Made by a program: the position numbers and the translations under genes | Part shown: positions 3,574-47,185 of the stretch, one piece after another | Layout of the letters: each line of letters starts with the position of its first letter | Numbering within the stretch: the first letter of the stretch is position 1 | Notes under the pieces: model-generated | Seen by the model: the letters and a program-made list of their open reading frames with translations, nothing else | Databases searched by the model: none | What the model was told of the DNA's origin: nothing | Source of the DNA: Klebsormidium nitens | Lineage: Eukaryota > Plantae > Klebsormidiophyceae | Length of the DNA stretch: 64,000 nucleotides | Direction: 5' to 3' | Assembly: GCA_000708835.1 (NCBI GenBank) | Contig: DF237059.1 | Location: forward strand, 130,944-194,943

Positions 3574-4672
3574 ATTGGTAGTTTTCTTATCACAAAGTCA
3601 CCTCGAAGCTCAGGCCCCGGATGCTATTCTGAAACCAGACCGTTTGTACTACTTGCTAGGGCTTGCCAGGATTCACAAAAGCCAGTTCGTTTGACAGATT
3701 TCGGGCCATGGATGATTGCTCCTGTGATTGGCAACTTGGACATGCGATCTGATTTATAGTCCAGTGAGCTTGAAGTACATATCTGAATTACTTGATGGTA
3801 CAAGCTAGCCGCCCATCATTGCCCATATACATAAGTTTTGTTTCCGAACTTCGAATATGTACGAATGGTTTCAATGGCTTAAGCATGATCATCTAGCATG
3901 AGTTGTCAGCTGCGCTTTTAAACATGACGGAATTCAATGACTTGCATCGAACTCCTTCGCTCGATCGATCCGATTATGCGACGGTGATCATCTACCACGA
4001 TCATCTACCATGACATCTACCATGATCCGAGCTCGATCAAAGATTGCATAAGCTGTATGCTACTGAGTGCCAGAGTGCACTATAAGGGACTCGTTCTTGG
4101 CAAACCAACTTGGTTCTGCTCTCAGTTACTCGTGCACTTGCTTGCACAAGCTATGATGATTCGACGAGCGCGGCGCTCAATTCAGTGTCAGCTCGTTATC
4201 GTTGGAGTCTTGGAGAGTGACAGACATCACGGTAGACAGGCTTGCTCGAGACGAGTAAACTCATGGAAGTCACCTTCAAGGTACTTGTACGTAGTAGCCA
4301 ACCTGCTTTCACTTCCTGGATCCCCCTCAATCTGACTTGGTGCTTGTAAGACCAACTCTTGGCGGCGTGCGACCCTCAGATGCTAATACGGAAGTTGCTG
4401 CAACAAAAACGAGCAAGTCAGAGCGACATGATTGCTTTGTCAAGTCCGCCGACCAACTCTTAAGTATCATGGAGGGCCAAAGATTAAGGCCGTGCTTCGT
4501 GAAGCGCCGATACATCGTTCGCTCTATTTATTAGGCAGCGGATAGCAAAGCCGATGCAGATTTCCTAACATGTTCCCCGATCGGTCCCGAGCTGCATAGA
4601 ATGAATCTTATCTACGAAAACAGTGTTGCCAAGGAAACCTCAGCTGTGTTAGGAGCAAGTCTTCCTGCTCAC

Positions 4673-7893: not shown

Positions 7894-8538
7894 TCGACAC
7901 CCTGACTTGGTCGTACACTTTGTCATTTTTTTCGAATGTCTAGAGTTGTCAGGACCGTGGTTGTCTGTGCTCTACATGCTCGGATCCTTCTCATTGGGTC
8001 CGAATGGTGGATTGAAGGTATTCTAAATAATTGTGGTCAATCTTTGAGGCACCTGTGGACTATTCTTGGGGTATGCCTGGCCGTGGTCGCATCACATCAT
8101 AGTAACGCTGTGGCCTTCTAGGCTTCAGTAATGTCTTTGTCTCTGGAAATTGTTTATCAGGTGACAGCTTGTCACTTTGCCGAGAAGGTCTTTGAAAGCA
8201 ATCTGGAATCTATATATAAGCCCACCCTGCTTTCCAAGAAGCCCTCTTGAATGATTTCACCCATGAAGTTCTGTTTTCGCTCTGATGGAACCTAGCCTTT
8301 TTTGGGTTCCGAACACCTGCCCCTCCTGACATAGGAGCTTCTTCTTTTGGCACCCCTTTCCAAATGCCTACCTCACCTTCAAGCAATCCCTTCTTTCCGG
8401 TCCCCTTGGTAGAAGAAATTGTTTTTTTTTGGCACTCCTTCATATCATGGGGACTCCAACCTCCTACAACTCCTGGCGAAGAACATTCTTCTCCTCTGTC
8501 ATCACTTCACAGTGCCCATCTCTCCTCCAAGTAACTCA

Positions 8539-11500
8539 ATGTCTCAATCCTCTTGGCAACAGAATCTTGAGTCGTATGGGGACTCCAACCTCCTTCGCCT
8601 CCTGCCCGAAGAAGTCCTCCTGTCCGTCACCAGCCGCCTCGGCATCGCCGACCGCCTCCGCCTTGCCAGCACCTGCCGCAAGCTGTACCACATCAGCACG
8701 CTCCCGTCCGCATGGGCGTCCGTCGACCTGTCCGGAAGCGGCCCCGCCGTCGCCCGGATCTCGGACAAAGAGCTCTGGCGTCTAGTCAGGCGGTGCTGCG
8801 GAGGCGACGACGTCAGCAGGGGCGGTGCTGATGTCGGCCGGGAGAGAGATGACGTCGGCAGGGAGCCACCGCCCTTGAAGGGGCGCATCTGGCGTGATGA
8901 GGTGCTGAGGGAAGAGACGGTTGTTGCTCCACCGGGGAATGCAACCGGGGGGGCTGCGCAAGCAGGGGCCGGGCCCCCCGGGGGGATCATCCTGGCGTCG
9001 GTTAACCAGCTACGAACCCAACAGGGTCAGGAGCAAGCCCCAACGGTTTCAGCTGCCCCCCCCACGGGTGCGGTGGTCGATTCTACGTGGGGTTATGCGG
9101 GGGGAGTGGAAGAGAACAAGTCCCCGCTTGGAAGAGGGGACCCGCTTTCGATGTCAATTCCTCTTCGGTATTTGGACATCTCAGGTTGCAGTCAGATCTC
9201 GCGGGAGTGCCTAACGTCAATCATCGCGCATTCTGCGAGCAGTTTGCGGCAGGTTCGGGCGTCGGGGGCGTGTTTTCTGGACCGGAGGGGCGTGGATTTG
9301 ATTGTGCAGTATGGGATCCAAGCGGAGGTGGATGTGGAACTGACGGCGCCGAACAAGGTGGAGTGGCGCATGCTGCTGATGAACCTGAGGGGAGAACGGG
9401 ACCAGGGCCTTATCATTAAGCGGCTCCTACTGAAAGGTTCGATTTGTTTCTCGCCCTTGCGACCTCCTTTCCGACCATACTCCGTCTGTCTCGTGTGCGG
9501 ACCGTTTTCTGACCCTCCTGTTGCTTTTCTGGAAACGCCCGGTGGCACACTGTGTTCTTGGGCGGCAGGTCCTTTTCAGGTGTCTGTCTTTCTCCAACAT
9601 GCGCCTCGCAGAACTCGCTTGCCCGGACTACACCCAATTGCAATCGGCCTTTGCTTCCGTCTTTTTCGCACCTGCTTTTTCTGCCACTCCACCCTCGTCG
9701 TCCTCCCCGCAGACGCTCTCTGGCGCGCATTGACTCTCGCACCGCCAAGGTCTTTTTCAAGTGTCCGTTTTTCGCACCATACACCTCGCGAAGCATTGCA
9801 CCTCGACGGGAGTTGATTAGCGTCAGCCTTTTTTGCGGCTCTTCTGTGCCTCACTTTCTCATACCGCACCATCCTTCAGTTCGTTGCAGATGCTCCGCTG
9901 GCTCTCATCGACTCCCGGTCCGGGCAAAGCCTTTTCAAACGTCCTTTTCGCCACCATGCGCATCGCCGGAACGCGCGGTAGCACTCCCCATCTCGTGCCT
10001 CTCTCTTCTCACACCCCACCCTCACTACCCCTTTGCAGATGCTCCGCTGGCTCGCATTGACTCCCGCGCCGGCAAAGTCCTCTTCCAGATGTCCATTTTG
10101 CACAACATGCGCCTCACCGAACTCCACCTCGACCATTGCGTTCTGCGCCCGTCGGACGCGGTCACTGTGCTGGAAGCGGTTCAGCACAACGTGGGCTTGC
10201 ACACCCTACGCATTAGCAGTGAGTTTTCTTCTCGTCTTTCATCGCCTGGTGCTTGTTTGACCGAGCTTTCGGCTTGTTTCCTTGGTCTGAACTCCGAGGG
10301 AAAGATTCAGTCGCGTTGGTTAGCGGCAGTCAGCTGACGGAGGTCACCTTGCTTTGCTGAGAAGCGTTGACTCGCTCGACTTCTCGAACGACGGTAGGGG
10401 GCAGTCGAAAGGCGAAGACCCGCTGGCAGTGACATGTATATCGACGCCTAGAAGCCCAAAATTCTGGAGTGTATTTCATAGTGAGTACACTGACGTGCGA
10501 AAGGAGCAGGACTGCGACATGCGTTAGCGGCGAGCGGGATGATTTTAATAATTGACTTTGTCAACTTTCGTTACGCATCAGCGGAGATTTTTTTGGAGGA
10601 TGTCGCAGAGGAGTGCGCCCAATGTGGAAAAAGTACGACGAGATGCTCCAAACCCTGCATAATAGCAGTGGGCCTTACGTCATCTTCATAAACTCAAAAA
10701 CTGGGATTCTACTCCGAAGTTGCTCTCTTGCATTTGACGGGCTCAAAGGTGCGGAGAAAGTTGGTTCGAGAGTGCCGATAATAGCTGGACCAAAGGAAAC
10801 CGTTTGGATGACAACAAAAACTTGTTCCTGTGGCGCGCAGAAGCCCCGGAGGGCATCTTCGAACACGTACAGCCCGTGCGCGCCGCCTTGACGGCGATGT
10901 TGCAGGACAATTTCACCCTGCGGAGCTTGATCATTGAAGGTGAACTCCTTTCTTCCTACTGATTTCAGCAGGCAGCAATCTCCAAAACGTTTGAGGTAGT
11001 CAGCGGTGGGAAGAGGACTGTGTGCTGCGTGAGGCGTGGCGCTGCGTAAGTTGTGGCCTCTGTTCCGTTTTGCTAAGTCCCTTGCTGCAGCTGAAGCTTT
11101 TTGAGAAATTCTAAAGGGCTTCGGTGCATCATTGCCAGATCAGAAGCTTGTGTCCCGAAGCAGGAGTCGTTTTATAATCAAAATTGCCTTCATCGCCGAT
11201 TCCATTCGAGCGGCTGGTATGTGACTTGACCCTGAAAGTTACTTGGAAGATACTTGAAAGCACCGACATATTTGTGCGTTCTATCAATAAAGTGTTTGAC
11301 ATGACATGGGATCCGTACTTTATGTTCGGAGGTTGATGCCACGGTGTTGCTTGCAGATACTCGAGTAGACGAAGACTGCGTTGACGGAATCGTTCTTGGC
11401 GCCAGTGCCAATGGCGCGCTGACGAGCTTGGGGCTCAGTAGTAAGTTTGCGTCCCTTTGGTGCATTTCTTTTTGCGTTCTGCTGCGATTGGACGCTTTTG

Positions 11501-13943
11501 CTTGAGCCGAATGTTCAAATGCGCCCAGCTTTTGGATCTGGTTGAGCATTCGAGCTTGAAGGCTGGAAACTTTTGGAAGAATAATGAGCGGTGCAGGTGA
11601 GCTAACGTCTTTAACTCGCTTGGACAGCGTTTTCCCCGAGCGCTTGCTTCAATTGACCAAAAGACAACCTGGTTTGAGGACCAAGCGGTCATTGATTCCA
11701 TTGATTTGAACGCGGACCAAGCACCGTACAAGCGATCTGATTTGCCGATGGCAAACAGACCAGTATCCTCTCAAATGTGTACTTATCTTGGGATTCTTTG
11801 CAAGTTTGACTGCGTTTGCGCGGGGATACTGTGCGCGTGCCTTTCCTTCACCGAAAATCCTTCTCTAATGTCCCTGCATCTTGTTCGACGCAGGAATAAA
11901 AGTCGCTGCCTTTGAGAAGGTGTACGCATCGTTGGGTCCAGGGAACGAACTTGGTTCGTTGAAAGAGCTGCGGCTGACAGGTAGGTCGTTCGTCTTTCGG
12001 GTTTCCGCTTTGCTTTTCTTTTGTCAGACAGAACCTGAGGATTCCAGCCCACTTTCAAAGGTGTTTGCTCTTCCAGGCCAAACTGCTCTGACGTCTTGTC
12101 CTCACACTTTGCCAGCTTTGCTATCCTACATCAGCCGAGGCCTTCTCATCGAATGCTCTTCCAGTACCACCCCATTCTAGCACATGCCTCTTGAGGCCTT
12201 TCCGCCTTTGGCATCGTGGTTGACGGACGAGGCGTTCCACCGCCGTATCCGCAGGGGGTTTCAATCCAAGAGCGAGTCCTCAACCAACAAGTCACTGTCT
12301 GCTGTTGTCCGGAAGTGGACTCGGGCGGATGGCTGAGCGAGTTGCTGGCAAATCGAGTGGCGTGCCAAAGCACCCCTTCTCAGATCAAGTCCTGTGAGAT
12401 TGTCTGAATGATCTTGCCGCCGATTTTCGGATGCAGGCAGCAAGCTCCCCTGCCGGACTCTGTTGCAGCACACGCCGCTCTTCCAAAACTCCAGTCGAGG
12501 GATCCGACACTTAGAACTAGACGGTAAGAGCTTTGTCGCCGAGGTCCGTTCTTCTTCTTTTCTGCTTGAACGATTCTAACCTTTGTTTGCTCCGAAGGTA
12601 GACAGCTCAGAGCGCCCAGAAGTGGTTTACAGCAAAGCGACACAATGTGGTTACTGTACCCCGCTGATATTGTAGGCTCGCCGACACCGCTCTGAACTCG
12701 CCGGTGCTAAATTCAGAGGTTCAGATCCTCGCAATTCGAGTCAAGCAAGTGCTCCACTCTTCAGGATAACAGCGGGACCTTGAACTGAAAGCACTAGAAG
12801 CACCTCTAGGGCACAAGGGTAAAGTCAGGGCGCAAGTCGCTTCCCTTCGCCGTGTGCGATTTTACTGTCCTACTCAAGTTCCTTGACCTCGTGAATTGCA
12901 GTGAACACCTCCTGTAACGGTCAGTGCGTCGCTGCCCTGAGCAAGTTGCTCGACCGCAACGGGAAGCTGCACCACCTTCGGCTAACAGGTGACCACCATG
13001 TTCCAAGTTTGATTCGACGAAGTTGATGTATTCGTGTAGGTCGCCGAAGAGCCTGACTGGCAGAAGACAATCTCGCCTCTGGGGGCAGCTTTTGCTGCTC
13101 TTGCTAGTCAACAGCTGTATCGATTGAAAGATCTTCTGCTTTGAAACCGCTCGCTGAGCCTGCGATTCTTGTACAAGTCAAAGCACGACCTCTAGTGATA
13201 TCAGCAATTTCACTTTGGATATATCGATGTGCATCGTCTGTTGCACTTATCCACCAAGCTTTTCAAGAATCGGGTTCCAAACGATTCTTTGAAACAGTCT
13301 GCAACTCATAGCTGCCGACGCCGAGGTGGCCGTTCACGAAACAAGTCTCGTCTACATCCAACTGACAAAGCTGCTCTCCTTCAATGCAGTACACTATGAG
13401 GAGATGACCCGCGGCTCGGCGGCTGCGCTGATGCGGCTCATGAAACGGCACGGCCAGCGGGTCGCCGTTCAAACGCCGGCGGCCCAGGGGTACAAACCGG
13501 TGGGCATCCGGGACCTGCAGTTGGCGACCCTGGACAGGGTGTACAAAGACAGTGAGTCGCCGTTTTCCGCAATCTGCCCAATGCTCGAATGATTATCATG
13601 CGAAGATAGTCCTCAAGTAGCTGAGACAAGGGATCTGTGACCAAATCCTCTGAACAATCGAAACGATGTCAAGCACCGGTTTGGGCATAATTCGTAGTCT
13701 ATTATACGGCCTTTGAGCCGTCGAGACTGCAGAAAGTTGCCACGTTAAGCTGCAGCGGGATTGCGTGCAACTCGAAGTGCTGACCAGCGAAGGTAGAAGT
13801 GGCATCACTCGTTTCTGTTCCTCCCCGCATGTTCGTTGAGCAGTCGCTTATGAGGCGCTCTGTTTTCCCCTGCAGGTCGACCACGCCTCCTGTTCGCACT
13901 CTTCGCGCTTGCCTGTGCAAAGCTGACCTTTGCGGCAGCCTAG
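8539..13943 (+). CDS. F-box / LRR (RNI-like) protein; exons 8539-9436, 10039-10218, 10841-10939, 11894-11980, 12437-12523, 12902-12988, 13312-13551, 13876-13943
   Basis: F-box motif LLRLLPEEVLLSVTSRLGIADRLRLASTCRKL. LRR-like units: LRYLDISGCSQI, LTELHLDHCVL, LQDNFTLRSLIIE, LKELRLT, IRHLELD, LLDRNGKLHHLRLT. All introns are phase 1 and GT-AG. An additional exon near 12181 is possible. Confidence 0.8.
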
Positions 13944-27938: not shown

Positions 27939-29434
27939 TTAGGACTCGGATAGTTGACATGCCCGCCTATGACCAGCTTGCCATGCCGTCTTTTGGCACT
28001 CTTTGCTGCAATACTTCACTTGCTCGCTGTTGCACCTTCCGCATACTTTCAGAAGACTTCCCCCCTCAGCCTTCAGGTCTCCACAAACCTGACACGAGTC
28101 TGATACTCCCTCCTCTTTGACCTTCTGAAGCCTTTTGCATTCAGCCATATGGGTTTTGAAGAATCTCCGCTGGCAGTCCTGCAAATGTCTCACGGGAGTC
28201 TGTCAGTTGCTTAACAGATGCACATTACCGCACAGTAGATGATACTCGCTGCCAAGTTACGAGTAACAACAGCTTCCGCTGTTACTGAGGGGCGTCCAAC
28301 CTTTGTCCAAACCACAGCAGGGCCAGGACTGAACCGCTACCAGTACTAGAGGGTCAAACCAATTGTGCTTGCAAGTTCCTAAAGTTGGGGCGTCATTTTG
28401 ACCGCTCATGTCACTAGACTCCTACAATTGAGTTTATAATCCTTCTTGTCAATTCTCTGTGCTCAGCAATTTGCCTGGAGCCTAGAATGACTGGACTGAC
28501 TGTGCTTCATTGTTTTGATAATACAGTCAGTCTGCATTCTGGCCTTTCCCCGTTCATACAGAGCACGCAGACTTCAATCTTTCCCAAGTGCAACATCTAC
28601 AACCGCATCTGCATCAATCCTTACCTTGCTGCAGAACAAAGCTATGGTTTCATTCACACAGTTCCTGCACCCCCTCAGCTCCAGCCCTTCTGGGGTCTCT
28701 GTCTTGCCACAAGCAGCACAACCCCGCAACGGCGCCGCCACAAAAAAGTTGTCTAACCCCAACATCTCCGTGCGGTACTCATCCGCGTACAGAGCTAGGA
28801 CAGTGAGTATCTTGTTGACTCGCTCATTCCCAAGGTCGTACACATCCTTTTGCAAAGCAATTCCCCTGGCCTCAAACTCCTTGAACTTTTCGACCGCTCT
28901 CCTCTCCTTGCAGTGGAAGGATTGCCCTGCCTTGATGTTATCCATATCCAGCATCATAACGAAGTCGTTAGGGAGCTGTCTCGGGAGCTTGTTTTTGGCC
29001 AAAAGGCTGGCAGCCATTGACCATGCGTGCTCGAGATCATCTTGAAGCTCGCTGCTGCACCAATTCTCATACAATGCCACCAGCGAACCCTGTCCATCTG
29101 AAACAAAGTCCTCAACATTAGACTCCGGAGTAAGCAGCGCAATCTGCTCCACCGAGTTCCCCCGCCTTAGGATATCAGTCCTCTTGGCCGGCATGTTTGC
29201 GACGCATGACTGGAGCAGATTCTTCTTTCCTGCCAAGCTTAACTCCGTCCACATCTTCTTGAAGCCCTCATGGTGCTCCTCCCAGAACCTCCTCAGGTTG
29301 TTCTTCAAGCTTCTGTTGACAGCCATCGGCCCGTCTGGTATCAAAAACAGGGGAGGCAGGTCCTCAGCTGTCTTCTTGTTGGCTGCGGTCGCGCATCGGC
29401 GCCCATCACCGCCTGTCCATTTTCCCTCAGCCAT
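27939..29434 (-). CDS. Protein with an uncharacterised N-terminal domain and two C-terminal MYND zinc fingers; exons 29434-28625, 28178-27939
   Basis: CAACGKTETPEGLELRGCRNCVNETIALFCSK|DCQRRFFKTHMAEC and CQVCGDLKAEGGSLLKVCGRCNSEQVKYCSKECQKTAWQAGHRRAC both fit the MYND pattern C-x2-C...C-x2-C...YCS.eCQ...W..H...C. One phase-0 GT-AG intron. Confidence 0.88.
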
Positions 29435-33181: not shown

Positions 33182-34837
33182 TCACATGTGGCTCCCCCGC
33201 AGCTTTTTGCACTCCCGCTTGTGCCCAGCCTGCCATGCTACCGTCTGGCACTCCTTGCCGCAATACTTTACCTGCTTGCAGTGGCACTTGGAGCACTTCC
33301 TCAATGCGCCTCCTCCCTCTGACTCTAGGTCGCCACACACCTGACAGCTTCTGGATTTCCCCAGCTCTGCATCTTTCTGAAGCCTCAGGCACGCTGGCAG
33401 ATGCCGGACAAAGTCCCTTCTTTGGCAGTCCTGCGAAAATAAACAACGGATTGTTAGAGCTGATAAATCCCTTCGAAATGCAAAGTTGAGTACTCTAGAC
33501 TGACAATTCCTTTCATTGCAAACATTCCAGAAAGCTCCTCCACAATAGAGAAGATGCCATATAAGCCTGAAGCTTGGATCTCAGACCTGGTGCTTAGTGT
33601 CACACCAAGAAATACGGGGCTTAGATACTCAAAAAGGCCTTTTGGACCAAGGATCGAGTGAGAATAGCACTCGGGTGCATCCAAAGCTCTCTGATGCCCA
33701 CCCACAATTTTGCTTTTGTTGAGTGCCTTCAATCCAAAAAGGAGTCGTCACATAAACGAAGACCCCATTGATCCCAGTGAAGGATCCTTGAAGTTTGACA
33801 GACATTATGCAGCTGACAATCTTGGAGAAGTACTAGCTACAGCCAATTGACTAGGATGCTTTCATTAATTTCCACACCTGACCCACTGAACCTAGTTCGA
33901 ACGCATTTCATGAAGGAGCCAACTATGGGCTGCTGCTTCAAAGCAAGCAGTACATTCTCCAAGTTCGGATCTAGTTAAGAGTGATCTTCAACAAGTAACA
34001 GTAATCATGCTCACCTTACTGCAGTACAGCGCTCTGCTCTCATTTCCGCAGTCCCTGCATCCCCTTAGTTCCCCGCCCTCTGGTGTGTCAGGCCTCCGGC
34101 ACAAAGCGCAGCCCTTGACAGGTGACGATACATAGAAGAACTGGTCTTCACCCAGCATGTTCATTCGGTACTCATCAGCAAAGTGTGCCAAGAAGGCCAG
34201 TTTCTCTCCAAGGCGATGATTTACCAGGAAGAAGATATCTTCCTTAATCAGACAACCTCTGGCCTCAGCCTCTTCGCACGCTTTCAGCGTTGTGCTGTTG
34301 GCATCTACTTTGAAGCTCATCCCAGCTATAAGGGGAAGACCTTCTAGCATTGTGTTGGCCACTACGATGTAGGTGTGGTTAGGTGTCACCTGAGAGGTGG
34401 TCTCCATGTGTCTATATGCAACCTGAATGTCAGAGCTGACCTTGGCCAGCTTCTCCTCAAGCTTCCCATGGCAGATGTAATCAAAGGAGGAAACCAACGA
34501 GTTCTCTGTGTCTGACAACAGGTCTTCAACGTTCAGTTCGGCGCAAAGGGACAGGACATCTGCAAATGGCTCGTCGTCCTTTGATTTGTCTTTCGCTGTT
34601 GCTGGCAAGCACGCGTATACAGAACAGAGTAAGTCTCTCCTTCCCACCGCAAGTCAGTGCCCTCCACCTACTTCTGAAGCCCTCAGAATGCTGTGCCCAG
34701 AATCTCCTTAGGTTGTCTCTCAAGCTCCTGTGAATAGCTTCCCAACCGCCCACCAAATCCATGCACAGAACCAGATCCTGGGGCAAGATCTTCTTTCTTC
34801 CTACTTTCGAATCAATCTGCTTCACTTGCCAAGCCAT
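33182..34837 (-). pseudogene. Paralog of the double-MYND gene with one apparent +1 frameshift at about 34651 (pseudogene or sequencing error); exons 34837-34015, 33430-33182
   Basis: Aligns to the 27939-29434 gene (SLRDNLRRFW vs SLKNNLRRFW; ELNVEDLLSD vs ESNVEDFVSD; ADEYRMNMLG vs ADEYRTEMLG) and has the same intron position, CSK|DCQ. Exon 2 encodes DCQRRDFVRHLPAC...CQVCGDL...CSKCHCKQVKYCGKECQTVAWQAGHKREC. Removing one T from actt restores WRALTAVGRRDLL, aligned to WTELSLAGKKNLL. Confidence 0.8.
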
Positions 34838-36330
34838 AGGCACTAGTTGCGCCCCTGCTGCTTCTCAGTCGTCCCCTTGATCGTGTTCTGACGCATGAGC
34901 ACTGATGTTCGCAGGTGACGTCTAGACCGACAAGAGACTTTAAAGCTAGCCTGCGCCTCTTGACAAGCTGAGCCGAGCTTTGGAAACCAAAGCTCCGAGT
35001 CCCGGTCAGCTTTGAGAAGAGCTCTGAACCGCTTTGAAGTCGGAAGCTCAGGCTGGAGACAGTCTGAGTCAGCTGGCTGCTTTCTGCTTTCAAAGGTTTT
35101 TGGCGCGAAGGCCCAGGGTTTACCGTAAAACCCGACTTTCCGAGTCTATACCTAGTCGGACCCGCCGCCTGGCCGCGGATCGCCCGCCCGCGCGGGCCGG
35201 CCATGCACGGCGCGCTGTCCGGCAGCTGTGAGTCCCGGCCAGCCGAGAGCTCTGGGCGACGAGAACCGGCTATTATTTCAGCCTCGTGCCAAGCGAGCGC
35301 CACGAAGTGCCGGCTTCAAGCTTTCAAGCTTTGAATCGCCGGTTCCAAAATTCACGCGGTTCAGGGCGTTGCCTGCCTGGGTCATGTGTTGATACAGTAC
35401 ACAAAAACAACTAACCCCGGGTACCTTTGTGAAGATACTATAGCACCTGGCCCAGTTTGCAAGCTACAGCGGAGACCAGATGTTCCCCAGATGTTCAGAT
35501 GTGAATCACAGCCAACAAACAGACTCTCTCAGCTTTGGAGCACTGAGGCAGACAACGAGGTGACATTTCGCCTCCAATTAATCATGAGTACTCTCCCACG
35601 TCTAGCAGGATCTCGATGCCCTTGGCCAGCCGCCTTATTGCAGCACAAAAATTGGCGACCTGATATATGTGAGTCCTTTCGACGCTGCTCAACGAATCAA
35701 ATGTGCTGCATGACACCCGCGTGCGTTTGGACGGTCTGGCTGTGACGTCGGGTGCAGGCCGCGCCACGGCAGTGCTGAGAGTCACTGGATTGCCCGATTA
35801 CCGCCCAGTCACTCTGGCGCAATTGTAAAGCCTCAAATGCTTGCGTCCACCCGGTGATTACGTGAACAGCCCATGTCCCATGCATAATAAATGCCCACCA
35901 TGCTCCGTCCCTATCATCCGGCCTGTAATGTACTCCGCTCAGCCACTCAAGCCCCATGATGCCTCTGGCTGCAACCGATAGATAGCTAGTACTGTTTGAC
36001 GATAGATTGAAGCAAGTCAGTAGAGTAACGATTGGTACTTCACAGTGTACGGATCCATTTGCAACTTTAAATTGTTCAGCCCAAATCCCACCAAGGCATG
36101 CCGTTGCTTCAACTTACAACTCATTGGTGGTGTACGATTCTAGGACGAGACTGAACTAACTCAACAAGATCTTTGAACGCTCTTCCGATTTGGCTCTGAG
36201 TGAGGGTGCATTGAAAGCAATCAATCTTTTAATCTAACCCTTCTGAATGGTTGCTTTGATGGGCGACTCCTATCTGAGTACTATCAACGGGTCGAAAGAG
36301 TGTAATCTTCGGCAATCCGGCAGGCCCATT

Positions 36331-38623
36331 TCAGGCGGATTTTTGGACAATCACGGCGCCGGATGAACATTTGGCAGTGACGTTCACCCCTCGCACCTGG
36401 TAGAGATACGGTGAATCCTGGTAGGTGGCAACGCCAGCCCACTCTCCCTCATGAACGGTCGAAGCGTCCCAGATCGAAGCATACCTGTCACGAACGAGTA
36501 GGTTCAGATGAGTATTACTGTTGTTTAAACTGATTATAATCAGATCAATGCCGACGTCAACTTGAAGTCAGAAACATCTCCAGGAATCGCATTATTTGCT
36601 CTCAAAGTCAGGTTAGCTGTCTGCAAAACGGACAATCAAACGGAGAATGGCAGCACGGCGCGAGAAATCAAAGCAAGTGCATGATGACCGCGTCCCGTCA
36701 ATCTGGAGTCAAGGTACTGTTCCCATGTGGTTGGTCGAGGCTAGTAACTTACACGAAGCTTGCTTTTGTCGGCCAGGGTGAGTAGCCGTCGTTGATTGCT
36801 TTCCGAACGAGTTCGTCGTCGATTGACCACCTGTTTGCAGACTCGAAGCTTCAGTGTTCCGTCACTCTCTAGAGTTGGTCCGCATTTGACAGACTGTTAC
36901 AAAGGGCTTTGTTGGAACTTGACTATTTGGATGTGGAAGAAGATTCAAAAACTGCTTTGAAACGCCGTTCTACAGTTAGGCCAATGGTGCTTGACGCGCA
37001 ATAACTTCTTCGCGCAGCTCAAGGCAGTCTGGACGCAACTTAGGAAGAATCGAAGCCAAAGTTTCTGGCTGCCCTATAGATTCATCCCCGTTTCGATCAG
37101 TGAGATCGTAAAAAAGCAAACGTCTCTTTCCCTTTCTGACTGAAGAGTACTTACTTTATGTACCAGCTCGTCCACTGGATCGTATACTTATGAAAAGCAG
37201 AACGGCAATCGAAGCCAAGACCGATCATCTGCTCGCGGTCGCCGCCCTTCGATCCATCAGAGAAAGAGGCGGAGAAAGGTAAGCCACTCTAGAAAGCAGA
37301 ACTGGCTAACGTTGTGGCTCCCCACGCTGGTTTGGAGTACTGATTTTGGGTTTGGCGAAAAGACTGTTTGATTGGCACCACCAGATGACGAGATGCAGAG
37401 AAAGCTTACAAAGGGCATGCGTGGCTTGAGAAATCACTTGCTATAGAAGTCTCTATTCAATTTAATTTTGAGACTCAGTTAAGGTTTCTCACCTCCCCAT
37501 TCACCCAGTAGTTCGTTTGGATCATATCCGGACTCTTTCCGAGGAACTCAAGTCGATCTCGTCCTGAGCGAAAGATTTGGACACTATTTGAATATGCATC
37601 CGGTGACGATTGAAGGAGGTCGCCATTTGTATACGAGTAATCTACGCAACTGAAACCCACAGATCCAAAAACATGAAAGCAGGTACGAGATAAGAAAAGC
37701 AAGCCGATTGAACGGCGGCCGTGATCCGCATTCCTAGGTCTAAGTTGAAGCACTCCTTGTCTTCCGTCCTGGTCGAGGGATCAGCAATAGAATTTCAACC
37801 TAAAGCTCTGGTGATCTTGAACTTAACTTGGCATAATTGTATGGACAATTACCTGATCCAGACTTCCTTCAAGAGAACTTATGTAGAATGTCGCAACCAT
37901 ACCCGCGAAGTTGCCTGCAATTACACAGAAGCTTTTTTGATGCCATTTGTGCCAAGAGGGTTGACTCCCGGCGGCCCAGAAAGTCGAAGACCACAGTTTA
38001 TGAAGCTGGCCAGAGCCTCTTCTGAGAATCTCAGGGGGACGCCCTTTGGGTCTCCTTCTCCCGTTCAATCCCTCTACTAAACTTCGTCGTTTCCTTGAAC
38101 TAGAGCAACGAGAAGCATGCATCAAAAGAGGGCTCCGTGCAGTCATCTTAACAACATGTGGTCAGATCTCACCGGCAGGACACTTGAGGAAAGCAGAAAA
38201 GGTCCCATGCGTGTATCTCTCGCGCGTGTGGATATTCCTCGCACCCGCGCTCCGATCCATCCTGATGGTATAGATGCCGCGGCTTGTCGTAACATGATCT
38301 GGGTCTGTAGGAAAGGGAGATCGAGACGCTCTAGCTAGCAGCCTCCATACAGGAACCAGTGGGCGTCGGCCCTTCAAAAAGCGTTCCCCGGTGCAATTTG
38401 GGCAGAGATGATGTTCATAGATCCAATATTTCCAACACTAGAAGGAATCAAGAAGAACCGCATGCGAATGAGATCTGGTTTGAAAGGTAGAACCTCACTC
38501 ACTGTAGTCAATCTCTGTCAGGATCAGGTGCGTTCTGAGAGCTGACAACATGAGGACGAAGAACGTTCCAAGCGCGGTCAACGCGGGCCACAGTTTGGTG
38601 ATTGAGACCGTTGCTACCGCCAT
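36331..38623 (-). CDS. GH16 endo-glucanase of EG16/XTH type, about 235 aa, with a signal-like N-terminus; apparent 1-nt deletion at 37550-37551; exons 38623-38503, 38304-38173, 37914-37853, 37563-37493, 37246-37155, 36830-36753, 36484-36331
   Basis: Spliced: MAVATVSITKLWPALTALGTFFVLMLSALRTHLILTEIDYNPDHVTTSRGIYTIRMDRSAGARNIHTRERYTHGTFSAFLKCPAGNFAGMVATFYISSLEGSLDQDEID[F]EFLGKSPDMIQTNYWVNGEGGDREQMIGLGFDCRSAFHKYTIQWTSWYIKWSIDDELVRKAINDGYSPWPTKASFVYASIWDASTVHEGEWAGVATYQDSPYLYQVRGVNVTAKCSSGAVIVQKSA*. EG16 motifs: GTFS...CP.G, YlSSLEG...QDEIDFEFLG, QTNY, LGFDC, FH.Y.I.W, YAS.WDAS. Six GT-AG introns are phase-consistent once one T is added (exon 4 is 71 nt, 72 expected). Confidence 0.9.
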
Positions 38624-45379: not shown

Positions 45380-47185
45380 CTATTTCACCTGTTCATAGTT
45401 CAGAGCAATGTACCCGGCTTTCCGCTTTCCGTTGGTCTTTCTCAACTCGTCAATTAGTCGGTTCCAATTCGATCCCAACACACCTACAAAGAAATCAGCA
45501 TCCGCGGCCAAAAATAGATTGACAAACGCCAAGTCCGACCCCGCTCTGGCCGGCGTGTGCGTCTTCCAAGGATCCTTTTCATTAGAATGGATCCGCTCTG
45601 CCTTTGTATAGTACAAACTCCAGTGAGGCGTATACTTGCTTACAGCCTGATCTAGTATATCTTGAGACTCGGTACTCAACCAGATCGACCGCACCGCTGG
45701 ATTATGCTGCCGAATCCTCTCCGCTTGCGCCATAAAGTCAGGCAAGTCCACAATCCGCATCTCGACACTCTTCTCATAAGCGTGCCGCACATGCACGCTT
45801 ATGAAAGGCCGCGGCATAAACACGTCATCCTTCCACAACTCCTGCTCCAATGCTCCAGAACGCCGGGGATCCCCAGCTTCTTCCGGCGCATGCTCGCCCT
45901 GAAAACGTATGCTCTCCGCCAGCCCTGCCGCGACCTCCACCCCAAAGGCATCGTGCCTCGCGCCGTTCATCAGTCTGCACAGGTACGCGCTCGGAGCCCT
46001 GAGCAGATACCGCGTCGCCTGGGCCCTCCACCAATTCATGGGGCCATATATCTGTGCCCCGTAGTTGAATGGGCCAACTGTTTCGTCCACTATCTTCCCC
46101 TCAAACTCAATCGAGCCCCGTTCCAGCTTCCAGGGCTCCCCCCACAAGTCTGGCACTATGTCCATAAGCGTGTGATCCATCAATGCATATTCGGGGAGTA
46201 AAACCACCCGCTCTTCCAGACCCTGCGCCGCTGCCATGAGATCCGCAGTAGATCCTGGCCTGTGCCGCTTTCCCGCGAGCGCGATCGCCGCGCACTCCTT
46301 CGATGTCGCCGGCAGGACGTAGCAGTCCAGCGTCCCGTTGCTTTCACCCGCACACCCCTCGTGCATTGCGCGCTCGAAGCTGTTGTCGACCACAAACACC
46401 CGGCCCGTCATGACCGCCAGCGCAAACCCCCCGGTTATCACATGTAACTGGGACCCTAACCCATGGGTCGATGTGTCTACCCATTGCGCCACCAGAAAGC
46501 GGACGTCCGACGCGTTGCAGTCTTGCGGATGCTGCCGCAGCCACAGGTCTTGCTGAACGTGCCTGGTTAGGGGAATGTTGTCCACGTCAGCGCCCCTAAC
46601 CCAAAACGGGTCAGGAACCGGGTGTCCCGCAAACCCTTTCTGGTCTGCCCAGTCAGGAAGGCCCCCGTCAGGTAGCCTGCTGTCTTGGCTTAGCTCCTCT
46701 TGAGACACACGGTCGCAGTCTACCAAATGCGGGGGCAACGGTGGCCCCTTCTCCGCCGTCTGCGCTTCGCTTCCCGTGCCAACCTTGCCGTCAAAGAAGC
46801 GCGAGCTGTTCCACGCTTGGAGGAGCGCCTTCACAGCAGGACAGGCGTCTAACTGCTCCGCTGTCCACTCTTTTCCCGACCAGGTGCAACTGAAGGGAAC
46901 CGCTGGAGCGGTCACATTTGGAACAGGGGGGCAGGGTTTGCAGGGCTTCTCTCCCATCAACTCTGCCCCCCCAAGGGCTGGAGCCGCCATCACATTTGCA
47001 ACAGGGGGGCAGGGCTTGCTGTGCTCCTCCCTCATGATATGTACCCCCACTAGAGCAGGAAAGGAGGTGACCAGCAGAAAGTGGTCGCTGGCTTTGTCGC
47101 CCCAGAAGATAGCCGCAGGGACCAGAAGGAAGAAGCTGACGCTGAAGGAGAAGAGGACCCAGAAGCGGGAGCAAGGGGACGCCAT
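45380..47185 (-). CDS. Intronless type-II membrane glycosyltransferase, GT23-like (alpha-1,6-fucosyltransferase FUT8/NodZ fold), 601 aa
   Basis: N-terminal signal anchor (RFWVLFSFSVSFFLLVPAAIFWG) and a Pro/Cys stem with the KPCPPV.NV.APA repeat. GLGSQLHVI...LAV.TGR.F.V resembles FUT8 G.GCQLHH. FISVHVRHAYEK (motif I), IWLSTES (motif II) and NLFLAADADFFVGVLGSNWNRLIDELR (motif III) are present. Confidence 0.8.
   Translation of the reverse strand: MASPCSRFWVLFSFSVSFFLLVPAAIFWGDKASDHFLLVTSFPALVGVHIMREEHSKPCPPVANVMAAPALGGAELMGEKPCKPCPPVPNVTAPAVPFSCTWSGKEWTAEQLDACPAVKALLQAWNSSRFFDGKVGTGSEAQTAEKGPPLPPHLVDCDRVSQEELSQDSRLPDGGLPDWADQKGFAGHPVPDPFWVRGADVDNIPLTRHVQQDLWLRQHPQDCNASDVRFLVAQWVDTSTHGLGSQLHVITGGFALAVMTGRVFVVDNSFERAMHEGCAGESNGTLDCYVLPATSKECAAIALAGKRHRPGSTADLMAAAQGLEERVVLLPEYALMDHTLMDIVPDLWGEPWKLERGSIEFEGKIVDETVGPFNYGAQIYGPMNWWRAQATRYLLRAPSAYLCRLMNGARHDAFGVEVAAGLAESIRFQGEHAPEEAGDPRRSGALEQELWKDDVFMPRPFISVHVRHAYEKSVEMRIVDLPDFMAQAERIRQHNPAVRSIWLSTESQDILDQAVSKYTPHWSLYYTKAERIHSNEKDPWKTHTPARAGSDLAFVNLFLAADADFFVGVLGSNWNRLIDELRKTNGKRKAGYIALNYEQVK

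What the first reader, a model, noticed from the sequence alone, without database searches (positions are those of the whole stretch)
36331..38623. Hidden 7-exon EG16-type GH16 with a secretion-signal-like N-terminus and no XTH C-terminal extension
The ORF track misses this gene because its exons are only 62-154 nt. Seen: the reconstructed protein has EG16-diagnostic motifs (YISSLEG..QDEIDFEFLG, LGFDC, YASIWDAS), ends right after the beta-jelly-roll, begins with a hydrophobic segment (LWPALTALGTFFVLMLSAL) and carries an N-V-T sequon. Established: characterised land-plant EG16s lack a signal peptide and the XET_C tail, whereas XTHs have both. Inference: this is an intermediate, apoplastic EG16-like enzyme of the type proposed to precede XTHs in charophytes, relevant to the origin of xyloglucan/mixed-linkage-glucan wall remodelling. 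It may belong to the charophyte EG16-2 clade rather than being new.
Basis: partly seen in the sequence, partly recalled or inferred. Interest (0 to 1): 0.75.

Follow-up and report, generated by a model that had tools for sequence, protein, structure and literature searches.

The report
Broken copy of algal EG16-2 glucanase
This is a seven-exon gene for a wall-glucan-cutting GH16 enzyme of the EG16-2 group already described in the alga Klebsormidium. In this sequence one base is missing from the codon in the middle of its catalytic motif, so it is an ordinary family member that is either freshly broken or mis-sequenced.

Summary
The gene is real. It lies on the minus strand at 36331-38623, with seven exons of 121/132/62/71/92/78/154 nt and six canonical GT-AG introns.

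The motif QDEIDFEFLG is not encoded. Exon 4 reads GAC GAG ATC GAC TT|GAG TTC, one base short in the Phe codon. The exons sum to 710 nt, and translation stops 9 codons after the break.

The closest relative is K. nitens KFL_009220030. It has the same exon structure, with exon 4 of 72 nt reading GAC TTT GAG, and 81% protein identity. It lies in a different genomic context, so it is a paralogue.

- dN/dS between the two copies is 0.18 overall and 0.10 in the catalytic domain.
- Amino-acid change is about equal on both branches.
- The damage is therefore very recent or a sequencing error.

An ML tree puts the gene inside a Klebsormidium-only clade (100/98), outside land-plant EG16 and XTH. That clade is the published EG16-2 group. 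K. nitens has six such genes, five of them with predicted signal peptides and none with the XTH extension (PMC8711696). Interest is low.

The parts
38503..38623 (-). Exon 1 (121 nt). It holds the ATG in a G..ATGG context, a short n-region with one Lys, the 19-residue uncharged hydrophobic stretch (residues 11-29, window 38593-38537), and then RTHLILTEIDY.
   Evidence: It is 65% identical to the N-terminus of K. nitens P0073, which starts at the homologous ATG.
38173..38304 (-). Exon 2 (132 nt), the first beta-strands of the GH16 sandwich (..YTHGTFSAFLKCPAG). It has one codon more than the paralogue, an in-frame difference.
   Evidence: Pfam PF00722 gives a weak hit (12.3 bits). VvEG16 is the weak best PDB match. 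It is 74% identical to P0073.
37853..37914 (-). Exon 3 (62 nt): NFAGMVATFYISSLEGSLDQ, with a strong donor CAG|GTAATT.
   Evidence: It is 85% identical to P0073.
37493..37563 (-). Exon 4 (71 nt; 72 in the paralogues), the catalytic ExDxE motif. It reads D-E-I-D, then a two-base remnant of the Phe codon, then E-F-L-G-K-S-P-D-M-I-Q-T-N-Y-W-V-N-G-E in the next frame.
   Evidence: The part after the break is 89% identical to P0073.
37550..37551 (-). The break: TT where KFL_009220030 has TTT (Phe) and the kfl00110 paralogue has GTC (Val). This is a loss of one T from a run of three.
   Evidence: DNA alignment A5. The L001 exon 4 sequence is.
37155..37246 (-). Exon 5 (92 nt): GGDREQMIGLGFDCRSAFHKYTIQWTSWYI.
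   Evidence: Pfam PF00722 scores 20.2 bits, E 4e-4, for 30 residues. The best PDB matches are VvEG16 and PtEG16, ahead of licheninases and XTHs. It is 90% identical to P0073.
36753..36830 (-). Exon 6 (78 nt): WSIDDELVRKAINDGYSPWPTKASF.
   Evidence: It is 92% identical to P0073.
36331..36484 (-). Exon 7 (154 nt including the TGA): YASIWDAS..., the last strands of the sandwich, the N-V-T sequon at 36384-36376, a 14-residue unconserved tail and the stop.
   Evidence: Residues 1-36 align to residues 166-201 of the 207-residue VvEG16 chain and to PtEG16 (E 1e-5). It is 83% identical to the unannotated exon 7 of the K. nitens paralogue. No Pfam XET_C hit was found.

Best explanation
This is a paralogue of K. 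nitens KFL_009220030 in the Klebsormidium EG16-2 clade of GH16. In its intact form it would encode a protein of about 236 residues with three parts:
- an N-terminal ER-targeting hydrophobic segment, either a cleaved signal peptide or a signal anchor;
- one beta-jelly-roll domain that cleaves beta-glucan backbones by the retaining GH16 mechanism, with the nucleophile Glu and helper Asp in D-E-I-D and the acid/base Glu opening E-F-L-G;
- a short tail without the XTH C-terminal extension.

In the sequence given, one T of the Phe codon between the Asp and the acid/base Glu is missing. Translation leaves the frame after D-E-I-D and stops 9 codons later. The product would be about 118 residues, without the acid/base Glu and without more than half of the sandwich.

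My preferred reading is that this base loss is real. The locus would then be a very young pseudogene or null allele of an enzyme gene that was under strong purifying selection until recently, made tolerable by its close paralogue.

What is shown: the gene structure, the break, clade membership and the past constraint. What is inferred: the secretion route, the substrate, that the break is biological and not technical, and likely nonsense-mediated decay of the mRNA.
For: Structure and break:
- Searches give exon 4 as 71 nt against 72 nt in the paralogues, with TT against TTT.
- No frame-preserving alternative keeps the catalytic motif. All 18 GT-AG combinations tested and exon-4 skipping lose D-E-I-D.

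Clade:
- In the ML tree the window gene and KFL_009220030 pair at 100/100.
- Seven Klebsormidium sequences form a clade at 100/98.
- Land-plant EG16 (100/100) and XTH (100/99) are separate.
- Exons 5 and 7 match solved EG16 structures best.

Past constraint:
- dS is 0.52 and dN 0.096, so omega is 0.18 overall and 0.10 over codons 41-215.
- End branches are 0.11 and 0.091.
- Lineage-specific amino-acid changes are 11:8, 8:7 and 10:9 with three outgroups.
- All splice sites, the start and the stop are intact, and the only other length differences are in frame.

Why I lean to a real mutation:
- If the window comes from the published K. nitens assembly, that was 5.4 Gb of 454 Titanium plus Illumina reads for about 104-117 Mb (PMC4052687), roughly 46-fold coverage.
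- From my own knowledge, not tested here, a consensus error in a run of only three T is rare at that depth.
- From my own knowledge, single loss-of-function variants in redundant secreted-enzyme families are common.
- The published census lists one K. nitens EG16-2 (Kfl00047_0180) as 'fragmentary'. A frameshifted locus would yield such a model.
- No protein of 102-390 residues matching these exons at or near 100% is in the databases.
Against: - The lesion is a homopolymer length change, the classic 454 and long-read artefact, and it is the only defect in an otherwise well-kept gene.
- I could not confirm which assembly the window comes from. Exact look-ups of ten window ORFs found nothing.
- I had no reads or transcripts for this locus, so a real break and a technical one cannot be told apart here.
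- One of four relative-rate comparisons (13:4, p 0.03, uncorrected) hints at slightly faster change in this copy, but the other three do not.
- SignalP or an equivalent could not be run. The cleavage site seen in the paralogues (AEA|Q) is replaced by ALR|T, so 'secreted' is inferred from homology and hydropathy only.
Confidence: 0.5

Rival explanations
1. The gene is intact and functional, and the missing T is an assembly or sequencing error (a run of three T called as two). The locus then encodes a working, ER-targeted EG16-2 endo-beta-glucanase of about 236 residues, a close paralogue of KFL_009220030.
For: - There is only one lesion, and it sits in a homopolymer.
- Omega is 0.10 in the catalytic domain and the two branch lengths are about equal.
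- All six introns keep consensus sites, and the other length differences are in frame.
- The published K. nitens assembly used 454 reads assembled with Newbler.
Against: - From my own knowledge, not measured here, a run of three is short for a consensus error at roughly 46-fold mixed 454 and Illumina coverage.
- No transcript-derived or annotated full-length protein for this locus appeared in word and profile searches seeded with its own exons. K. nitens transcripts seem absent from those sources for the intact paralogues too, so this is weak.
Confidence: 0.38
2. The locus makes a catalytically dead GH16-like protein through alternative splicing that restores the frame. Examples are exon-4 skipping, or the exon 3 donor joined to an AG inside exon 4. 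The product might be a glucan-binding protein and not an enzyme.
For: Exon-4 skipping with the canonical donor, and 18 other GT-AG combinations, give open frames of 211-270 residues.
Against: - All of them delete or replace the nucleophile motif and one or more core strands.
- The internal acceptors lack polypyrimidine tracts.
- Exon 4 after the break is 89% identical to the paralogue, as expected for a normally used coding exon.
- There is no transcript evidence.
Confidence: 0.04
3. The window comes from a different Klebsormidium species, and this gene is the orthologue of KFL_009220030 and not a paralogue.
For: - No exact match of ten window ORFs exists in a collection that holds the K. nitens proteome.
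- The window-to-KFL_009220030 distance on the tree (0.20) is similar to that between K. nitens P0070 and its counterpart P0054 from a transcriptome that I took to be another Klebsormidium species without checking (0.23).
Against: - There is no synteny. About 9.6 kb on each side of the K. nitens gene gives no blastn or tblastx match anywhere in the 64-kb window.
- Other agents' notes on this genome call it K. nitens. I did not check those notes.
Confidence: 0.12

Closest known systems
Klebsormidium nitens EG16-2 proteins (GH16), especially KFL_009220030 (kfl00922_0030). Described as a group by Behar et al. 2018, as cited in PMC8711696, and by Shinohara and Nishitani 2021 (PMC8711696).
   Same: - The seven-exon structure and intron phases are the same.
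- Protein identity is 81% in the tree alignment.
- The N-terminus is homologous and starts at the same ATG.
- It has the same SLDQDEID, LGFDC and YASIWDAS motifs, the same N-V-T sequon and a short C-terminus without XET_C.
- The two are sisters in the tree at 100/100.
   Different: - One base is missing in the Phe codon of the catalytic motif.
- Exon 2 has one extra codon.
- The C-terminal tail is 6 residues longer and unconserved.
- The genomic neighbourhood is different.
- The AxA cleavage site of the kfl00110 paralogues is replaced by ALR|T here, and by AFK|T in KFL_009220030.
Land-plant EG16 endo-glucanases (VvEG16, PDB 5DZE/5DZF/5DZG; PtEG16, PDB 5SV8).
   Same: - They are the best solved-structure matches for exons 2, 5 and 7.
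- They share LGFDC and YAS(I/V)WDAS.
- They have a single beta-jelly-roll ending at the same place, with no XET_C.
   Different: - EG16s have no N-terminal hydrophobic segment (PMC8711696).
- They form a separate clade at 100/100.
- Their activity on mixed-linkage glucan and xyloglucan is measured, whereas EG16-2s are biochemically uncharacterised (PMC8711696).
XTHs (GH16_20; PttXET16-34, PDB 1UMZ/1UN1; TmNXG1, PDB 2UWA).
   Same: - They share the GH16 fold and the ExDxE motif followed by FLG.
- They are secreted.
- They share ancestry with EG16 and EG16-2 according to PMC8711696.
   Different: - XTHs carry the XET_C (PF06955) extension, which was not found here.
- They are a separate clade at 100/99.
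- They appear only as weaker PDB matches to exon 5 and not at all to exons 2 and 7.
Bacterial GH16_21 enzymes (alphaproteobacterial ExoK, Bacillus licheninases).
   Same: They share the fold and the catalytic motif. Exon 5 matches licheninase chains at E about 2e-3. ExoK is the proposed donor lineage of EG16-2 (PMC8711696).
   Different: They served as the outgroup in the tree and were separated at 100/99. The gene here has six spliceosomal introns and a eukaryotic structure.

Membership tests
GH16 (Pfam PF00722) | Sequence homology to the GH16 beta-jelly-roll domain | tested here: met
   - In per-exon Pfam scans, exon 5 scores 20.2 bits (E 4e-4) and exon 2 scores 12.3 bits to PF00722.
- The seven exons tile the PF00722-carrying K. 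nitens protein P0073 at 65-92% identity.
- The joined model was not scanned because it has no reference.
GH16 (Pfam PF00722) | Intact catalytic E-x-D-x-E motif in one reading frame | tested here: not met
   The codon between D and the second E has two bases, so the frame is lost and a stop follows 9 codons later. No alternative splice keeps the motif.
EG16-2 (charophyte clade) | Phylogenetic placement with the K. nitens GH16s that define EG16-2, outside EG16 and XTH | tested here: met
   ML tree of 52 rows under LG+C20: the Klebsormidium clade of 7 has 100/98, and the gene is sister to KFL_009220030 at 100/100. The broken codon was masked as X. Two-domain proteins were left out.
EG16-2 (charophyte clade) | N-terminal signal peptide (predicted for five of six K. 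nitens members by SignalP 4.1 in PMC8711696) | tested here: inconclusive
   - The n-region has net charge +1.
- A 19-residue uncharged stretch follows, with a 19-residue Kyte-Doolittle mean of 1.83, equal to paralogue P0046.
- LSA|LR is a possible cleavage site, but the AxA site of the paralogues is lost.
- No signal-peptide or transmembrane predictor was available, so a cleaved signal and a signal anchor were not separated.
EG16-2 (charophyte clade) | No XTH-type C-terminal (XET_C, PF06955) extension | tested here: met
   - The stop lies 14 residues after the last residue aligned to VvEG16.
- Exon 7 and three downstream minus-strand ORFs give no Pfam hit even at E up to 10.
- The paralogue ends at the homologous place.
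EG16-2 (charophyte clade) | 'Signature residues' of EG16-2 at the sites matching residues 44-46 of PttXET16-34 (PMC8711696, Fig. 4) | not tested
   The residues are shown only in a figure and a supplement that are not held as text.
EG16 (land-plant clade) | No signal peptide, and membership of the land-plant plus Coleochaetales EG16 clade | tested here: not met
   A hydrophobic N-terminus is present, whereas Vitis and Populus EG16 have none. The gene lies outside the 100/100 EG16 clade.
XTH (GH16_20) | XET_C extension and membership of the XTH clade | tested here: not met
   No PF06955 hit was found. The XTH clade is separate at 100/99.
Endo-beta-glucanase activity on mixed-linkage glucan, xyloglucan or cellulose-like glucans | Measured hydrolysis or transglycosylation | not testable with these tools
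   This needs biochemistry. EG16-2s are uncharacterised (PMC8711696).

The most novel reading that the evidence does not exclude
The base loss is an assembly error, and the locus is an unannotated seventh K. nitens EG16-2 missed by the protein-based censuses. Its N-terminus, like that of KFL_009220030, has lost the AxA cleavage site and keeps a 19-residue hydrophobic stretch followed by a basic residue. It would then act as an uncleaved signal anchor, giving a type II membrane-tethered wall glucanase subclade. This would sit beside the C-terminally anchored EG16-2 that another agent reported in this genome.
Probability: 0.12. Interest if true: 0.35.

Novelty: already known. Interest (0 to 1): 0.15.

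Why it matters
Very little changes for the question of XTH origins. Secreted EG16-2 enzymes of Klebsormidium without a C-terminal extension, seen as putative ancestors of EG16 and XTH, are already in the literature.

The practical value is in curation:
1. This locus should not be counted or modelled as an active enzyme until the missing base is checked.
2. Its closest paralogue, KFL_009220030, is annotated 44 residues short because the model reads through intron 6. Its true last exon is at L001 11732-11867.
3. The pair shows family turnover in Klebsormidium: an old duplicate (dS about 0.5), long kept under selection, with one copy now apparently disabled.

Tried and rejected
- Looked for a second GH16 copy in the window with tblastn of every exon peptide. 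Only self-hits came back.
- Ran the representative-library search with exon 7 alone. The top hits were repetitive proteins; the useful returns were two-domain EG16-like proteins and a 47-residue fragment. None was near 100% identical.
- The first profile that mixed exons with a two-domain protein misaligned, so I did not use it. I rebuilt profiles on the single-domain proteins P0027 and P0073.
- Tried to identify the window's assembly and annotation:
  - an exact look-up of a 601-residue single-exon ORF and of ten ORF variants found nothing;
  - a by-sequence look-up of earlier findings was blank;
  - a literature search for kfl00047 returned only PMC8711696, and its supplement is not held.
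- Tested synteny with the K. nitens paralogue by blastn and tblastx and found none.
- Tested rescue of the frame by alternative splicing and rejected it as a route to an active enzyme.
- Looked for a hidden downstream XET_C exon and found none.

Left out: the joined (spliced) protein has no reference, so I did not send it to any search, family-scan, structure-prediction or atlas tool. All database searches were exon by exon, or used profiles whose rows were references. I built the joined model only inside local scripts from window.fa, with the broken codon as NNN/X, for alignment, dN/dS and the tree. No signal-peptide predictor or fold was run on it.
Full report
**What is in the sequence**

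The gene lies on the minus strand. I derived a model with canonical splice sites:
- exon 1, 38623-38503 (121 nt)
- exon 2, 38304-38173 (132 nt)
- exon 3, 37914-37853 (62 nt)
- exon 4, 37563-37493 (71 nt)
- exon 5, 37246-37155 (92 nt)
- exon 6, 36830-36753 (78 nt)
- exon 7, 36484-36331 (154 nt, including the TGA)

All six introns (198-324 nt) begin with GT and end with AG in good context. The N-terminal segment, YISSLEG, LGFDC, YASIWDAS and the N-V-T sequon are all encoded as stated.

The exons sum to 710 nt, which is not a multiple of three. The fault is in exon 4, which reads GAC GAG ATC GAC TT GAG TTC CTC GGA. That is D-E-I-D, two orphan bases, then E-F-L-G in the next frame.

- A DNA alignment with the same exon of two K. 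nitens paralogues shows a single-base gap in the window sequence. KFL_009220030 has GAC TTT GAG there, and the kfl00110 gene has GAT GTC GAG.
- Both paralogues have a 72-nt exon 4.
- As written, the frame runs D-E-I-D-L-S-S-S-E-R-V-R-I and stops.
- The break separates the nucleophile Glu and helper Asp from the acid/base Glu of the GH16 ExDxE motif.

I enumerated every GT-AG combination around exons 3-5 that keeps the downstream frame open. All 18 of them, and exon-4 skipping, remove the D-E-I-D motif. No isoform of the sequence as given can encode an active GH16.

**Family**

Per-exon Pfam scans give weak GH16 hits for so few residues: exon 5 scores 20.2 bits (E 4e-4) and exon 2 scores 12.3 bits.

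Per-exon searches of solved structures give the following:
- For exon 7 the only matches are the plant EG16 structures VvEG16 (5DZE/F/G) and PtEG16 (5SV8), at E about 1e-5.
- For exon 2 they are also the only matches, but weakly, at E about 0.5.
- For exon 5 they are the best matches, ahead of licheninases and XTHs.

The word search is blind to proteins outside 0.55-1.75 times the query length. I therefore used exon 7 for the one all-against-all search, which returned EG16-like proteins. I then ran three word and profile searches: one seeded with one of those hits, and two with alignments whose rows were references to the window's exons plus a full-length relative.

These searches found four K. 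nitens GH16 proteins:
- P0046 and P0155 on scaffold DF237059
- P0070 on DF236960
- P0073 (KFL_009220030) on DF237871

The window's exons tile P0073 end to end at 65, 74, 85, 89, 90 and 92% identity.

**The paralogue**

I fetched the K. nitens locus as L001. It has the same seven-exon plan and the same phases, with exons of 121/129/62/72/92/78/136 nt and an intact 690-nt CDS.

Its annotated protein of 185 residues is truncated. The model reads through the donor of intron 6 (...S-F-V, stop). The true seventh exon lies at L001 11732-11867 and is 83% identical to the window's exon 7.

Outside the gene, L001 and the window share nothing by blastn or tblastx. The two are therefore copies in different genomic contexts.

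**Constraint**

A Nei-Gojobori comparison of the two coding sequences, with the broken codon masked, gives these values:
- overall: dS 0.52, dN 0.096, omega 0.18
- codons 41-215 (the catalytic domain): omega 0.10
- the signal region: omega 0.37
- the last few codons: unconstrained

Amino-acid changes private to the window copy against those private to KFL_009220030 are 11:8, 8:7, 10:9 and 13:4 with four outgroups. The terminal branches in the tree are 0.11 and 0.091. A copy that had drifted as a pseudogene for any large part of a dS of 0.5 would not look like this. The break is very recent or not real.

**Phylogeny**

I built an ML tree with IQ-TREE under LG+C20. It had 52 rows: Klebsormidium, zygnematophyte, land-plant EG16, XTH, bacterial ExoK-like and fungal CRH-like sequences. 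Two-domain proteins were left out.

- The window gene is sister to KFL_009220030 (100/100).
- Both sit inside a clade made only of Klebsormidium sequences (100/98).
- Land-plant EG16 (100/100), XTH (100/99), fungal (100/99) and bacterial (100/99) groups are separate.

The K. nitens GH16s are the reference EG16-2s of the literature (PMC8711696, Fig. 5 legend). The gene is therefore an EG16-2.

**N- and C-termini**

Residues 1-10 carry one Lys. Residues 11-29 are an uncharged stretch with a 19-residue Kyte-Doolittle mean of 1.83, the same value as paralogue P0046. Vitis and Populus EG16 have nothing comparable.

The paralogues on scaffold kfl00110 have a textbook AEA|Q cleavage site. At the aligned position this gene has ALR|T and KFL_009220030 has AFK|T, and a basic residue at -1 is unfavourable. 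LSA|LR is an alternative site. I could not run a signal-peptide or transmembrane predictor, so 'ER-targeted' is well supported but 'cleaved and apoplastic' is not settled.

At the C-terminus, the last residue aligned to VvEG16 (residue 201 of 207) is followed by 14 unconserved residues and the stop. Neither exon 7 nor downstream minus-strand ORFs hit XET_C or anything else in Pfam. The N-V-T sequon is conserved as N-V-T or N-V-S in KFL_009220030, P0070, P0054 and P0048.

**Comparison with what is known**

Shinohara and Nishitani 2021 (PMC8711696) state the following:
- K. nitens encodes six EG16-2s and no EG16 or XTH.
- Five of the six have conventional predicted signal peptides.
- EG16-2s lack the XTH extension and are the putative ancestors of both EG16 and XTH.

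The Penium genome preprint gives the same count of six.

That paper marks one K. nitens member, Kfl00047_0180, as fragmentary. The four K. nitens proteins I found lie on scaffolds 11, 110 (two of them) and 922. Another agent's note reports a membrane-anchored member on another piece of this genome (I did not check it). The fragmentary sixth member may therefore be this frameshifted locus. I could not verify this, because the supplement is not held and the scaffold cannot be fetched.

No protein of 102-390 residues in the searched collections matches these exons at or near 100%.

**Real break or artefact?**

I cannot decide this with the tools at hand.

For an artefact:
- The change is a homopolymer length change and the only defect in the gene.
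- The published assembly used 454 reads (PMC4052687).

For a real change:
- A run of three is short for a consensus error at about 46-fold mixed 454 and Illumina coverage. This rests on my own knowledge of the platforms, not on a test.
- A close paralogue provides redundancy.

I put a young null at about 0.5, an assembly error at about 0.4, and the rest on minor alternatives.

I also could not confirm directly that the window is from the published K. nitens assembly. Other agents' notes on the same genome say K. nitens, but exact look-ups of window ORFs were blank.

The spliced protein has no reference, so it was not sent to any search, family, fold or atlas tool. It was assembled only inside local scripts from window.fa, with X at the break, for alignment, dN/dS and the tree.

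**Verdict**

The interpretation reduces to a known family whose 'unusual' features are its published definition. Interest is low.

Noticed in passing
L001 (K. nitens DF237871.1) 11407-11867: The public model of KFL_009220030 (185 residues) is truncated. It reads through the intron 6 donor to an in-frame TAA. A well-conserved seventh exon with a proper acceptor lies at L001 11732-11867, which gives a 229-residue protein.
   Followed up: yes
L002 (K. nitens DF236960.1) about 4270-4341 and 4420-4490: The gene of P0070 holds a tandem duplicate of the exon that begins inside the catalytic motif. The upstream copy encodes L-A-F-E-L-L-G-K-S-S-S-I-V-Q-T-N-Y and the used copy L-D-W-E-F-L-G-K-N-S-S-I-I-Q-T-N-V. 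A transcript isoform from another transcriptome (P0161, against P0054), which I took to be another Klebsormidium species without checking, appears to use the upstream copy. This could be a pair of alternative exons or a decaying duplicate.
   Followed up: partly
window 45383-47185 (-): A 601-residue uninterrupted ORF with an N-terminal hydrophobic anchor-like segment and a weak Pfam hit to the alpha-1,6-fucosyltransferase catalytic region (FUT8_N_cat, E 3e-4, below the cut-off). It is probably a single-exon Golgi glycosyltransferase-like gene. The exact sequence is not in the protein collection.
   Followed up: partly
window 28577-29434 (-) and 33991-34843 (-): Two long minus-strand ORFs about 5 kb apart share clearly related sequence by eye, for example ..NLRRFW..H.EGF.. 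and a C-terminal ..RGC..C....PEG.ELRGCR.C.NE..AL.CSKV. They look like a tandem pair of related genes with a Cys-rich end. Neither has a Pfam hit.
   Followed up: no
window 8419-9816 (+): An ORF with an F-box domain (PF12937, E 6e-8) near its start. The 3' part of the ORF looks non-coding, so an intron is likely.
   Followed up: no
P0155 (K. nitens, scaffold DF237059): A second GH16 model on the same scaffold as P0046 is also truncated (141 residues). It leaves the family alignment right after ..YYVNGQ. This suggests another mis-modelled or damaged EG16-2 copy. The 47-residue orphan P0005 resembles a last exon of this subgroup.
   Followed up: no
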